A program made the position numbers and the translations under genes. A stretch of DNA of 63,949 nt, filler included, from Reticulomyxa filosa (taxonomy: Eukaryota; Protista; Foraminifera): the NCBI GenBank assembly GCA_000512085.1. It is 16 parts of 16 records of this genome, joined end to end, with 100 filler letters (N's around TTAATTAATTAA, not from the genome) between each part and the next. Parts side by side here need not be neighbours in the genome. Positions count along the whole stretch, not along the records: positions 32,799 to 34,424 come from ASPP01034436.1; 15 more parts are not named here. One strand, 5' to 3'. The notes below the pieces were generated by a model, which had not been told where the DNA came from, did no database searches, and saw only the letters and a list, made by a program, of their open reading frames with translations. The first letter of the stretch is position 1; each line of letters opens with the position of its first letter. Below, piece after piece: positions 32,799 through 34,424 of the stretch.

Positions 32799-34424
32799 GT
32801 TGCGAAAGCAACACCATCCCCTAACAAAGGGCTTACAATGATCGCCCACAAAAAAGTTTAGTATTTATATGTGTATATGTATGTACAAATACTTTAAAAT
32901 TTTTTTTTTTTAATAGGTGCCATATGACATCCCGGGCACAAAGAACGGGCACAAGCCCGAAAAAACATTCGGGATATTTTTATAATTTTGGTGTCGGGGT
33001 TATTATTTATAATAACACCAATGCCGAAGTGGCTCCAAGCCGCAACTCCGGGCTTAAAACCCGTAAACAAAAAGTTTAGATTTATTGATTTATTTTTTTT
33101 TTTTATGACAGCAACATTAAAATAATATTTTTACAGAGCACCAGTGCAGCGGGTTATCAACCTGCAAAAAAAAAATTGATTGCACTTATTTAAGTGCATT
33201 ATCATAATGCAACTCGGTTGCGCAGAGCGCAAGCACCACACAATCTGCGCTCAACAATGGGTATGTAGCTAATTATTTTATCTTTATTTTAAATTTATTT
33301 TTATTAATTAAATTAATTGGTTGGTGTTTTTATAGAGCCAAGCGCGCATATCTACGGGTTTAAAACCCGCCAAACAAAAAAAAAAAGTTTTGCTGCTGTG
33401 TATTTGTTTTTTTATGATATATAATATAATATTATTATTTATAGGTCCGAGGCGCAACGAGCCACAAACTGCGCGACCAACCACGGGTTCACAACCCGCA
33501 TCAATAAATAAATAAAAAAGTTTTGATTTATCTTTTGTTTCTATTATTATTAAAGATTGTTATGTGTTTATAGGGCCAAAGCCTCCGAGACCCCGTTCAA
33601 CCTCCGACTAAGGGTTTACAACCCATCCAACAAAAAAAAAAGGTTTGATTGTATGTTTTATTTATTTATTATTATATAAATATTAAAAACGACTATTTTA
33701 TACATATAGACAATGACCAGAGACTGCCATCACACAAGTGACTGGCCATCAGCCAGTGCAAAAAAAAAAAAAGTTAATTTTGTTTTGCTTTGCTTTTCTT
33801 TATAAATATATTATTATCAAAATTTATAGGGACCGCAGTGACTATTGCAATCATCAGGCGCGTCCAAGGGGTTGTAACCCGCTCACAAAGAAAAAAACAA
33901 AGTTTTGCAAGTTTGTTTTATTTTTATATAAAATAACAATAATATTATTATTATTTACAGGCCCCAGAGCATCGAACACACGCTCCAGCGCAACAAGGGT
34001 TTACAACCCGTATCAAATAAATAAAAAAAAAGTATTGATGTATATAAATATTCTTTAACTGTTATAACGGTTTTGTTGATATGTTACAGGGCCACTACAT
34101 CCAAAACCCCCACCTGCGCTCTCAACAGAGGGTTCCCAACCCGTCTCAATGATATCAAAAAAAAGTTTAGTATATTGTTTCTTTCATTTATTCAAAATTA
34201 TAATAATATTGCTATTGCCCATAGGCCCCTTCCACCAAATGCACGCTTCAACGGGCTCCGACCCGTCTCTAACGGGCTCCAGCCCATCAAACAAAAAAAA
34301 AATGTTTTGTTATTTTGTTTTTGTTTTTATTTATATGTATTATAATAATATATTAATATTATTGTATGTATAGGGCCCCGGCCACCTCCAACGCCTCCAA
34401 CGGGCTCCGACCCGTCCATAACGG
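32799..34424 (+). repeat. Tandem array of ~14 GC-rich exon-like modules separated by AT-rich GT..AG spacers; most contain a short inverted repeat followed by an A-run
   Basis: Inverted repeats start near 32829, 32946, 33049, 33149, 33355, 33484, 33612, 33741, 33869, 33997, 34130, 34252/34274 and 34401. Most modules are preceded by TAG/CAG and followed by AAAAA-GT. Confidence 0.85.

What the first reader, a model, noticed from the sequence alone, without database searches (positions are those of the whole stretch)
32799..34424. Array of ~14 modules: splice acceptor, variable segment, conserved inverted repeat, A-tail, splice donor
Seen: the whole contig is periodic (~100-130 bp, about 128 bp across 33355-33997). 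Most units read AT-rich...YAG, then a 15-45 nt variable C/A-rich segment, a stem-loop, an A-run and GT. Stems vary while staying paired: CGGGTT/AACCCG (33355, 33484), GGGTT/AACCC (33612, 33869, 33997, 34130), CGGGC/GCCCG (32946), GGGCT/AGCCC (34274), ACTGGC/GCCAGT (33741), GCGGGTT/AACCTGC (33149). The ORF track does not explain it. Hypothesis A (inference): a spliced non-coding transcript of hairpin-delimited variable cassettes, i.e. a repeat-spacer small-RNA or guide precursor. Hypothesis B: one-repeat-per-exon coding gene, because one frame repeatedly gives G-[LHYS]-[QKR]-P-[VAI]-x-x-K-K (GLQPIQQKK, GLKPAKQKK, GHQPVQKKK, GYQPAKKK), so GGN..CCN codons could create the hairpins. In-frame stops in several units (GL*P near 33874) would then make it a pseudogene. 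I cannot separate A from B by eye.
Basis: partly seen in the sequence, partly recalled or inferred. Interest (0 to 1): 0.8.

Follow-up and report, generated by a model that had tools for sequence, protein, structure and literature searches.

The report
Hairpin-bearing mini-exon array, not translatable
This 1.6-kb contig is a diverged tandem array of short C/A-rich exon-like blocks, each holding a conserved stem-loop and an A-run, separated by about 60-nt AT-rich intron-like spacers; this copy has no usable reading frame, so the repeated 'peptide' is most likely a side effect of the hairpin, and its function remains unproven.

Summary
The piece alternates 12 C/A-rich blocks (51-79 nt for single modules, GC 0.5-0.7) with AT-rich, T-rich spacers. 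Eleven of 13 spacers are 54-75 nt and run from GT to YAG.

Each block carries a short stem-loop 8-22 nt upstream of an A-run. The stem is kept by compensatory changes: 81.5% of cells are paired, and 4 pairs changed on both sides against 1.2 in shuffles.

Coding (B) has almost no support in this copy:
- No frame is open, and stops are as frequent as in shuffled sequence.
- There is no codon periodicity.
- The G-x-Q-P frame sits at offsets 0, 2, 0, 1, 0, 1, 2, 2, 2 from the acceptor.
- A profile of the exon peptides found no protein family among 1.84 billion proteins.
- G..P and KK follow automatically from GGN..CCN stems and the A-run.
- The only point for coding is that 6 of 8 internal exon lengths are multiples of 3 (p about 0.02).

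The repeat-spacer guide form of A is weakly supported at best: the 'variable' segments share motifs and show only a weak excess of similarity over shuffles.

Best reading (about 0.4): a tandemly duplicated exon-intron array that gives a spliced non-coding RNA, selected at nucleic-acid level. A decayed lysine-rich repeat gene is the main rival (about 0.3). The donors (GTTT[TA]G) are atypical. No relatives, no reads and no organism were obtained.

The parts
32799..32855 (+). Exon-like block u1, cut by the contig edge. Stems GTTGC/GCAAC (32799-32812) and GGGC..11 nt..GCCC (32829-32847), then an A6 tail.
32856..32916 (+). Intron-like spacer, 61 nt, GTTTAG...AATAG, GC 0.15.
32917..33073 (+). Double block u2+u3 (157 nt). 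Hairpins CGGGC/GCCCG (32946-32959) and CGGG..7 nt..CCCG (33049-33063). They are joined by an AT-rich linker (32967-33019) that has no GT or AG and holds the palindrome GTTATTAT/ATAATAAC.
33074..33136 (+). Intron-like spacer, 63 nt, GTTTAG...TTACAG.
33137..33260 (+). Double block u4+u5 (124 nt). Hairpin GCGGGTT/AACCTGC (33149-33165, one G.T pair) followed by A10. Linker 33171-33205 has no GT or AG and holds the palindrome GCACTTA/TAAGTGC (fold z = -4.5). Module u5 has the stem GAGCGCA/TGCGCTC (33225-33252) and ends ...ATGG directly before the GTATGT donor, with no A-run.
33261..33335 (+). Intron-like spacer, 75 nt, with a canonical-type donor GTATGT...TTATAG.
33336..33386 (+). Block u6, 51 nt. 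Hairpin CGGGTT/AACCCG (33355-33369), then an A11 tail.
33387..33444 (+). Intron-like spacer, 58 nt, GTTTTG...TTATAG.
33445..33519 (+). Block u7, 75 nt. Hairpin CGGGTT/AACCCG (33484-33498). The tail is ATCAATAAATAAATAAAAAA.
33520..33573 (+). Intron-like spacer, 54 nt, GTTTTG...TTATAG.
33574..33642 (+). Block u8, 69 nt. Hairpin GGGTT/AACCC (33612-33624), then an A10 tail.
33643..33709 (+). Intron-like spacer, 67 nt, GTTTGA...ATATAG.
33710..33772 (+). Block u9, 63 nt. Hairpin ACTGGC/GCCAGT (33741-33757), which carries two compensatory double changes relative to the family consensus. A13 tail.
33773..33829 (+). Intron-like spacer, 57 nt, GTTAAT...TTATAG.
33830..33901 (+). Block u10, 72 nt. Hairpin GGGT/ACCC (33869-33880). 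Its loop GTA is the reverse complement of the TAC loop of u8 and u11.
33902..33960 (+). Intron-like spacer, 59 nt, GTTTTG...TTACAG.
33961..34031 (+). Block u11, 71 nt. Hairpin GGGTT/AACCC (33997-34009). The tail is ATCAAATAAATAAAAAAAAA.
34032..34089 (+). Intron-like spacer, 58 nt, GTATTG...TTACAG.
34090..34164 (+). Block u12, 75 nt. Hairpin GGGTT/AACCC (34130-34142), then an A8 tail.
34165..34224 (+). Intron-like spacer, 60 nt, GTTTAG...CCATAG.
34225..34303 (+). Block u13, 79 nt, with two hairpins: ACGGG/CCCGT (34251-34266) and GGGC/GCCC (34274-34285). A10 tail.
34304..34373 (+). Intron-like spacer, 70 nt, GTTTTG...GTATAG.
34374..34424 (+). Block u14, cut by the contig edge. Hairpin ACGGG/CCCGT (34400-34415). 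Close copy of the first half of u13.

Best explanation
What it is: a piece of a eukaryotic nuclear transcription unit built by repeated tandem duplication of one exon-plus-intron module of about 128 bp. The C/A-rich blocks are short exons. The AT-rich, T-rich 54-75-nt stretches are minimal GT-AG introns.

What has been conserved: through heavy divergence, only nucleic-acid signals have been kept. These are the acceptor (T-rich..YAG|G(G/C)CC), a CWGCGC box, a 4-7-bp stem-loop, an (A)TCAA motif, an A-run and the boundary A(n)|GTTT[TA]G.

Coding status: the copy on this contig cannot be translated in any consistent frame. The recurring G-x-Q-P..KK 'peptide' is what any GGN..CCN stem followed by an A-run gives when each unit is read in whichever frame suits it.

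Product (inferred): most likely a spliced non-coding RNA whose exons each present one hairpin plus an A-tract.

Mechanism (inferred, not shown): the hairpin and A-tract, placed 8-22 nt upstream of every weak GUUU donor, act on the RNA. They could be repeated protein-binding modules of the mature RNA, or exon-definition and donor-presentation elements.

Shown here: the anatomy, the pairing conservation and the lack of coding signal.
Inferred: transcription, splicing and function.
For: Splicing-like boundaries:
- 11 of 13 spacers run GT..YAG within a narrow 54-75-nt length range.
- The terminal AG is the only AG in the last ~50 nt in 9 of 11, and T is 54% on this strand.
- Spacers have no structure (fold z about 0), while exon blocks fold better than shuffles (z -1.9 to -3.5 in 7 of 8).
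- Module u5 ends at a different, non-homologous point of the repeat, yet at a canonical GTATGT donor followed by a normal 75-nt spacer ending in TATAG. This argues that GT/AG are functional boundaries and not just part of a repeated motif.

Uneven conservation across the unit (alignment A2), with overall ungapped identity of only 42%, argues against neutral satellite DNA.

Hairpin:
- 13 of 14 units have a stem of at least 5 bp against 2.4 in shuffles.
- 81.5% of cells are paired, against 21-51% when the partner is slid.
- 4 pairs changed on both sides against 1.2 in shuffles (2 of 500).
- Two modules keep a stem but not G..P (u1 and u5).
- In the motif frame, the conserved paired bases include third codon positions (xxG before Gly, CCC for Pro; ACT..CCA in u9). 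A protein constraint would not hold these in a genome whose spacers are 84% A+T.

Against coding:
- Stops per frame are 7, 4 and 3 in 201 codons, against about 7 per frame in shuffles (P = 0.20 for the best frame), and there is no codon-position composition bias (p = 0.24-0.40).
- Hairpin-anchored frames have 5, 7 and 7 stops.
- The motif frame offset from the acceptor is 0, 2, 0, 1, 0, 1, 2, 2, 2.
- The profile search of 1.84 billion proteins gave 4 weak, mutually unrelated hits.
Against: - No transcript evidence: no sequencing run was listed.
- Donors are atypical. Nine of 11 have U at +3 and eight of those also at +4, with no consistent G at +5. Such donors are described as the rule only in Entamoeba, where the form is GUUUGN, and only 1 of 11 here fits that form.
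- From general knowledge, long arrays of a dozen or more tandem exons are usually protein-coding, and multi-exon non-coding RNAs of this kind are not a described class.
- Six of 8 complete single exons have lengths divisible by 3 (51, 75, 69, 63, 72, 75 against 71, 79; binomial p about 0.02). This is what a phase-preserving coding array would show.
- Compensatory changes in short palindromes can arise by template switching without selection. The u10 loop looks like an inverted u8/u11 loop.
- The units are related to each other, so the shuffle statistics overstate independence.
- No second copy or relative was found, so conservation is judged only among paralogous units on one contig.
Confidence: 0.4

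Rival explanations
1. A protein-coding gene, or a dead copy of one, with one ~24-residue repeat per exon. It would encode a disordered Pro/Thr/Gln/Lys-rich protein whose repeats end in a lysine run. The contig would be a pseudogene, a poorly assembled copy with wrong homopolymer lengths, or would come from an organism with reassigned stop codons.
For: - The exon/intron-like anatomy fits.
- Six of 8 complete exons are multiples of 3, clustered around 72 nt.
- Read unit by unit, the motif [TK]-G-[LSHY]-[QKD]-P-[AVIS]..KK aligns in 12 units.
- Units u11-u13 are phase-compatible in the motif frame.
- All three stops that lie inside or after the motif are TAA at places where other units have CAA. 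This fits recent C-to-T decay or a TAA = Gln code.
- Every exon ends in an A-run of 5-13 (6-13 in complete single exons), where assembly errors of one base are common (general knowledge).
- Tandem exon arrays are normally coding (general knowledge).
Against: - The motif frame is at variable offset from the acceptor (0, 2, 0, 1, 0, 1, 2, 2, 2). That region contains no long homopolymer to blame.
- Only 2 of 8 junctions are in phase.
- Exons that are multiples of 3 (u7, u9, u12) carry the motif out of frame. This would need paired compensating indels three times over.
- Stops occur at chance level in all frames, and there is no codon periodicity.
- The spacing between the GCGC box and the hairpin is 9-14 nt and does not differ by multiples of 3.
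- Uninterrupted A-runs of 10-13 are avoided in the coding sequence of most eukaryotes (general knowledge).
- No protein family with this repeat was found in 1.84 billion representatives, and the word search found nothing.
Confidence: 0.3
2. Not spliced at all. Either a tandem array of small independently made RNAs (GC-rich islands in a very AT-rich genome), or a DNA-level repeat whose short palindromes and A-tracts act as protein-binding or structural sites. GT and AG would then be parts of conserved flanking motifs (A(n)GTTTTG and TTTATAGG).
For: - Donors lack the usual purine at +3.
- GTTT[TA]G and TATAG|G are conserved as motifs beyond the GT and AG dinucleotides.
- GC-rich structured islands in AT-rich DNA are a classical sign of RNA genes (general knowledge).
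- The stems pair equally well or better on the minus strand (summed MFE -121.8 against -108.2 kcal/mol), so strand and molecule are not fixed.
- The u10 loop inversion hints at DNA-level palindrome dynamics.
Against: - No Rfam family matches, and there is no tRNA.
- There is no terminator-type arrangement on either strand: an A-run follows the stem on the plus strand, and a T-run precedes it on the minus strand.
- T3-T4 after the A-run is too short for a reliable Pol III stop in most units.
- The strand-asymmetric T-rich spacers, AG depletion upstream of the terminal AG and the independent GTATGT donor of u5 are unexplained by this reading.
- Units are far too diverged for a homogenised satellite.
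Confidence: 0.2
3. A repeat-spacer small-RNA or guide precursor. Conserved hairpins would delimit unrelated, acquired variable cassettes that are processed into guides (the strong form of the reader's hypothesis A).
For: - There is a conserved hairpin next to a much more variable 11-40-nt segment in every unit.
- There is no coding signal.
Against: - The variable segments share an exon start G(G/C)CC, a CWGCGC box and CAA(C) before the stem.
- They are slightly more alike than shuffles, a weak excess (z = 3.1, or 2.1 without the first 6 nt). This hints at diverged copies of one sequence, not independent acquisitions.
- The conserved element is only about 13 nt and itself varies.
- Pattern scans for the module in viral, metagenome and prokaryote collections gave only chance hits: a bacterial CRISPR array and REP-like palindromes with a different anatomy.
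- No target could be sought, because the genome is not available here.
Confidence: 0.05

Closest known systems
Tandem exon-duplication arrays with one repeat per symmetric exon (for example schistosome micro-exon genes, the titin PEVK exons, the Chironomus Balbiani ring 3 gene); recalled from general knowledge, not tested here
   Same: Many short exons of similar size separated by short introns. The units clearly arose by duplication of an exon-plus-intron module. Most exon lengths are divisible by 3.
   Different: There is no open frame, no codon signal and no constant frame for the shared motif. The best-conserved element is a base-paired stem with compensatory changes, not a peptide.
Long non-coding RNAs built of repeated hairpin modules separated by low-complexity linkers (for example the Xist A-repeat); general knowledge
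   Same: Short GC-rich stem-loops repeated many times with poorly conserved sequence between them. The structure is conserved more than the sequence.
   Different: Those repeats lie inside one exon. Here each module is its own exon with its own intron, and transcription is unproven.
Entamoeba-type introns with GUUUGU donors (bioRxiv 10.1101/2022.06.08.495308)
   Same: Short AT-rich introns whose donors carry U at +3 and +4 in place of the usual A/G and A.
   Different: In Entamoeba 97-98% of donors are GUUUGN. Here only 1 of 11 is GTTTG; the rest are GTTTTG, GTTTAG, GTTAAT or GTAT. Exon blocks with 55-60% GC are also unlike that genome.
CRISPR repeat-spacer arrays
   Same: A periodic alternation of a conserved palindromic element and variable sequence.
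   Different: There is no constant direct repeat of 23-50 nt. The period is about 128 nt, with AT-rich GT..AG spacers. The variable parts share motifs with each other. The only array-like hit of the pattern scan was a genuine bacterial CRISPR array with quite different anatomy (L018).
Dictyostelid Class I RNAs (PMC7919456)
   Same: GC-richer elements of about 60 nt in an extremely AT-rich context, with a CCCAYAA-like string near some stems.
   Different: Class I RNAs start with AAG, end with CUGU, have a stem joining their 5' and 3' ends, and carry an 11-nt motif. None of these features is present here.

Membership tests
Spliceosomal GT-AG introns (the spacers) | GT at the 5' end and AG at the 3' end, preceded by a pyrimidine | tested here: met
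   11 of 13 spacers fit; the -3 base is T in 8 and C in 3. Two spacers lack both signals.
Spliceosomal GT-AG introns (the spacers) | Extended donor able to pair with U1/U6 (GTRAGT-like) | tested here: not met
   Nine of 11 donors have T at +3, and there is no consistent G at +5. Only 33261 (GTATGT) is canonical.
Spliceosomal GT-AG introns (the spacers) | Spliced junctions seen in RNA | not testable with these tools
   The look-up of sequencing runs listed no run, so read laying could not be used.
Protein-coding repeat gene (one repeat per exon) | An open reading frame running through phase-compatible exons | tested here: not met
   Every frame path has at least 4 stops. The motif frame is in phase at only 2 of 8 junctions.
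Protein-coding repeat gene (one repeat per exon) | Symmetric exons (length divisible by 3) | tested here: inconclusive
   Six of 8 complete single exons are divisible by 3 (p about 0.02), but the two double blocks (157 and 124 nt) and the 71- and 79-nt exons are not.
Protein-coding repeat gene (one repeat per exon) | Codon-level signal (position-specific composition, stop avoidance) | tested here: not met
   Chi-square p = 0.24-0.40. Stops are 7, 4 and 3 against about 7 expected per frame.
Protein-coding repeat gene (one repeat per exon) | Homologous proteins elsewhere | tested here: not met
   The profile of 12 exon peptides against 1.84 billion proteins gave 4 weak unrelated hits. The word search gave none. 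Exons were searched separately, not joined.
Structured RNA element (the hairpin) | Base pairing kept through compensatory changes | tested here: met
   81.5% of cells are paired. Four pairs changed on both sides against 1.2 in shuffles (2 of 500). Slid controls give 21-51%. Caveats: the units are related, and template switching is possible.
Structured RNA element (the hairpin) | Membership of a described RNA family | tested here: not met
   The Rfam 15 scan at E up to 10 gave only sub-threshold chance hits. No tRNA was found, including in mitochondrial mode.
CRISPR-like repeat-spacer array | Near-identical direct repeats with unrelated spacers of uniform size | tested here: not met
   The conserved core is about 13 nt and variable. 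The segments between cores are 11-40 nt, share motifs and show a weak excess of similarity over shuffles.
Satellite DNA | Homogenised tandem units with even divergence along the unit | tested here: not met
   TRF finds no ~128-nt period. Ungapped identity is 42%, and conservation is confined to the boundaries, the stem and the tail.

The most novel reading that the evidence does not exclude
A multi-exon non-coding RNA gene grown by tandem exon-intron duplication. Each mini-exon would contribute one selected stem-loop plus a genomically encoded A-tract, so that splicing assembles a string of a dozen or more hairpin/A-tract modules from weak GUUU donors. Such a string could act as a scaffold or sponge RNA, or as a set of alternatively included modules. 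This architecture has not been described to my knowledge.
Probability: 0.2. Interest if true: 0.75.

Novelty: new variant of a known kind. Interest (0 to 1): 0.42.

Why it matters
If the array is transcribed and spliced, it would be an unusual case. Tandem exon duplication would have built a modular structured RNA, with selection visible on a small stem-loop and on the splice boundaries while the rest of each exon drifts.

It is also a useful warning. A GGN..CCN stem followed by an A-run imitates a conserved 'G-x-x-P..KK' peptide when each unit is read in its own best frame. The profile search recovered the same imitation from translated palindromic DNA elsewhere (P0003).

If it turns out to be a decayed lysine-rich repeat gene, it is ordinary.

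Tried and rejected
- Rfam at a permissive threshold gave only chance hits.
- tRNA search, standard and mitochondrial, found none. At a lowered threshold the calls were noise.
- Mirtron or structured-intron idea: the spacers fold no better than shuffles.
- Dictyostelid Class I RNA: the defining features are absent.
- Entamoeba origin of the GTTT donors: the GUUUGN rule is not met.
- Spliced-leader RNA gene array: the exons are not conserved, the 'intron' part is unstructured, and conserved acceptors would be unexplained.
- Ciliate IES boundaries (TAYAG): the orientation is wrong.
- Helitron or MITE ends: no terminal repeats or target duplications.
- Plasmodium subtelomeric TARE idea: the literature search gave nothing usable.
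- Stop-codon reassignment (TAA = Gln): it removes the TAA stops, but TGA stops remain in every path. Not testable further.
- Alternative donor inside the stem (GG|GTTT): the resulting exon lengths show no pattern.
- Minus-strand genes: there is no GT-AG on that strand.
- Module pattern scans: viral contigs gave 14 single chance hits. Metagenome contigs gave 7 hits: a CRISPR array in L018, REP-like palindromes in L015 and L017, an unrelated palindrome pair in L020, and three loci (L016, L019, L021) whose sequence was not read. Prokaryote genomes gave 2 hits whose sequence was not read.
- Exact look-ups of two ATG ORFs and a word search with the 106-aa read-through ORF found nothing.
- Sequencing runs: none was listed.
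Full report
**Observation**

The piece 32799-34424 (1626 nt, no N) alternates C/A-rich blocks with very AT-rich, T-rich spacers. 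Blocks have GC 0.5-0.7 and composition A 39%, C 31%, G 17%, T 13%. Spacers have GC 0.11-0.24 and T 54%.

Eleven of the 13 spacers are 54-75 nt long. They begin with GT directly after an A-run and end with YAG followed by G or A. In 9 of 11 the terminal AG is the only AG in the last ~50 nt. Two spacers (32967-33019 and 33171-33205) have neither signal, so the blocks on either side of them form 157- and 124-nt double blocks.

Every block holds a short stem 8-22 nt upstream of its A-rich tail. Thirteen of 14 units have a perfect stem of at least 5 bp, against 2.4 expected from shuffling (maximum 7 in 1000).

The stems at 33869 and 34274 are 4 bp, not 5. The stem at 33149 has one G.T pair.

Tandem Repeats Finder sees no ~128-nt period, because ungapped identity between units is only 42%. 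The hairpin-to-hairpin spacing is nevertheless 127-133 nt over six units.

**What is conserved**

An alignment of 12 units (A2) shows conservation confined to these elements:
- T-rich..TA[TC]AG|G(G/C)CC at the acceptor;
- a CWGCGC box;
- CAA(C) before the stem;
- the stem itself;
- (A)TCAA after the stem;
- the A-run;
- GTTT[TA]G at the donor.

Spacer interiors and most of the 'variable' segment are not alignable. This uneven pattern argues against a neutral satellite.

The variable segments are only slightly more alike than shuffles (z = 3.1, or 2.1 without the first 6 nt). Together with the shared motifs, this hints at diverged copies of one sequence and gives the 'acquired unrelated spacers' idea little support, but the excess is weak.

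**Are the spacers introns?**

For:
- GT..YAG boundaries, a narrow length range, T-richness on one strand and AG depletion before the terminal AG.
- No secondary structure in the spacers (z about 0), while the blocks fold better than shuffles (z -1.9 to -3.5 in 7 of 8).
- Module u5 ends at a different point of the repeat. Its ...CAACAATGG aligns with the CAAC-AAGGG of the other units' 5' stem arm. It ends at a canonical GTATGT donor, followed by a normal 75-nt spacer ending in TATAG.

Against:
- Nine of 11 donors carry T at +3, eight of them also at +4, and there is no steady G at +5.
- A paper on Entamoeba describes GUUUGU as an unusual donor, with 97-98% of its introns being GUUUGN (10.1101/2022.06.08.495308). 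Here only 1 of 11 fits that form.
- Splicing itself could not be tested, because no sequencing run was listed for this stretch.

**Coding test**

- No frame is open in any exon path.
- Stops per acceptor-anchored frame are 7, 4 and 3 in 201 codons, against about 7 per frame in shuffles (P = 0.20 for the best frame). Base composition does not differ between codon positions (p = 0.24-0.40).
- Anchoring the frame on the hairpin gives 5, 7 and 7 stops.
- The frame that yields G-x-Q-P lies at offsets 0, 2, 0, 1, 0, 1, 2, 2, 2 from the acceptor. It is in phase across only 2 of 8 junctions.
- The distance from the GCGC box to the stem (9-14 nt) does not vary by multiples of 3.
- G..P follows from a GGN..CCN stem, and KK follows from the A-run.
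- Two modules keep a stem but not the peptide (u1: GGGC..GCCC with an 11-nt loop; u5: GAGCGCA/TGCGCTC).

The exon peptides were aligned separately by reference (A1). Exons were not joined into a spliced model. The resulting profile was searched against 1.84 billion protein representatives. It gave four weak hits of unrelated kinds:
- P0002, fibronectin-III-like repeats with LTGLTP;
- P0001 and P0003, repeat translations, of which P0003 reads HTGLDPVSKNKNN..., the same imitation produced by a palindrome;
- P0004, an unrelated repeat protein.

A word search with the 106-aa read-through ORF found nothing.

The single observation in favour of coding is that 6 of 8 complete single exons are multiples of 3 (51, 75, 69, 63, 72, 75 against 71, 79; p about 0.02, post hoc).

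**Hairpin test**

On an alignment of 13 stems (A3), the named 7-pair helix has 81.5% of cells paired, against 21-51% when the partner is slid. Four pairs changed on both sides, against 1.2 in shuffles (2 of 500). The covariation score is 0.165 against 0.085 (2 of 500).

Module u9 (ACTGGC/GCCAGT) carries two double changes. In the motif frame these fall on synonymous third positions (ACG to ACT with CCC to CCA, and GGT to GGC with CAA to CAG). In most units the paired G before the Gly codon and the C ending the Pro codon are kept, although the surrounding genome is extremely AT-rich. This points to a constraint on the nucleic acid whatever the coding status.

Caveats:
- The units are paralogues, so the shuffles overstate independence.
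- Short palindromes can be perfected by template switching. The u10 loop GTA is the reverse complement of the TAC loop in u8 and u11.
- The stems fold as well or better on the minus strand (summed MFE -121.8 against -108.2 kcal/mol), as expected for a G/U-rich complement. Neither the strand nor the molecule (RNA or DNA) is therefore fixed by these data.

**Origin**

The module pattern was absent from viral contigs, where all 14 hits were single chance matches.

The seven metagenome hits included a bacterial CRISPR array (L018), REP-like palindromes (L015, L017) and an unrelated palindrome pair (L020). The sequence of L016, L019 and L021 was not read. For those three only the positions of the palindromes were listed.

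The two hits in prokaryote genomes were not read either.

None of the hits was this contig. Together with the intron-like anatomy, this points to a eukaryotic nuclear genome that is very AT-rich in non-coding DNA. The organism could not be identified.

**Verdict**

- Best reading (about 0.4): a tandemly duplicated exon-intron array producing a spliced non-coding RNA, whose exons each present a selected stem-loop and A-tract.
- Main rival (about 0.3): a decayed or mis-assembled copy of a lysine-rich one-repeat-per-exon gene.
- An unspliced small-RNA or DNA-level repeat: about 0.2.
- A true repeat-spacer guide precursor: about 0.05.

The finding is real and unusual, but its function is unproven and its context is missing.

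Noticed in passing
window 32967-33019 and 33171-33205: The two spacers that lack GT and AG each contain a near-perfect palindrome with a TT centre: GTTATTAT-TT-ATAATAAC and GCACTTA-TT-TAAGTGC. The second folds with z = -4.5. They look like a different kind of module, or small palindromic insertions inside double blocks. Both following blocks start with AATGC.
   Followed up: partly
window 33869-33880 against 33612-33624 and 33997-34009: The u10 stem-loop (GGGTTGTAACCC) reads like the reverse complement of the u8/u11 stem-loop (GGGTTTACAACCC), less one A. This hints at loop inversion by template switching within the palindrome.
   Followed up: no
window 33502-33519 and 34013-34031: The tails of u7 and u11 contain AATAAA(TAAATAAA) just before the A-run. 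These are canonical polyadenylation-signal hexamers, and they also supply the in-frame TAA stops in the motif frame.
   Followed up: no
window 33738-34058 and 34073-34345: ORFs of 106 and 90 aa read straight through two spacers each. They alternate hydrophilic stretches (from blocks) with F/L/I/Y-rich stretches (from T-rich spacers). They are not in the protein collection and change frame relative to the hairpin from unit to unit, so they are taken as chance.
   Followed up: partly
window 34251-34285 and 34400-34424: Modules u13 and u14 share a nearly identical CAACGGGCTCCGACCCGTC..TAACGG stretch. Module u13 holds two hairpins, and the contig ends inside the copy in u14. This suggests more recent duplication at this end and an assembly break inside the repeat.
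   Followed up: no
L018 1150-2350 (JGI994J12354_10006319): A long bacterial CRISPR array with a 66-nt period and a repeat containing GGGTTACAAACC. It was picked up by chance by the module pattern and is unrelated to the finding.
   Followed up: no
L015 5400-6110 and L017 580-790: Bacterial REP-like palindromes (ATAGCGATGGGTTTGAAACCCATCGCTAT and GGATGGGGTTTGCAACCCCATCC) repeated in intergenic DNA. Chance hits of the pattern.
   Followed up: no
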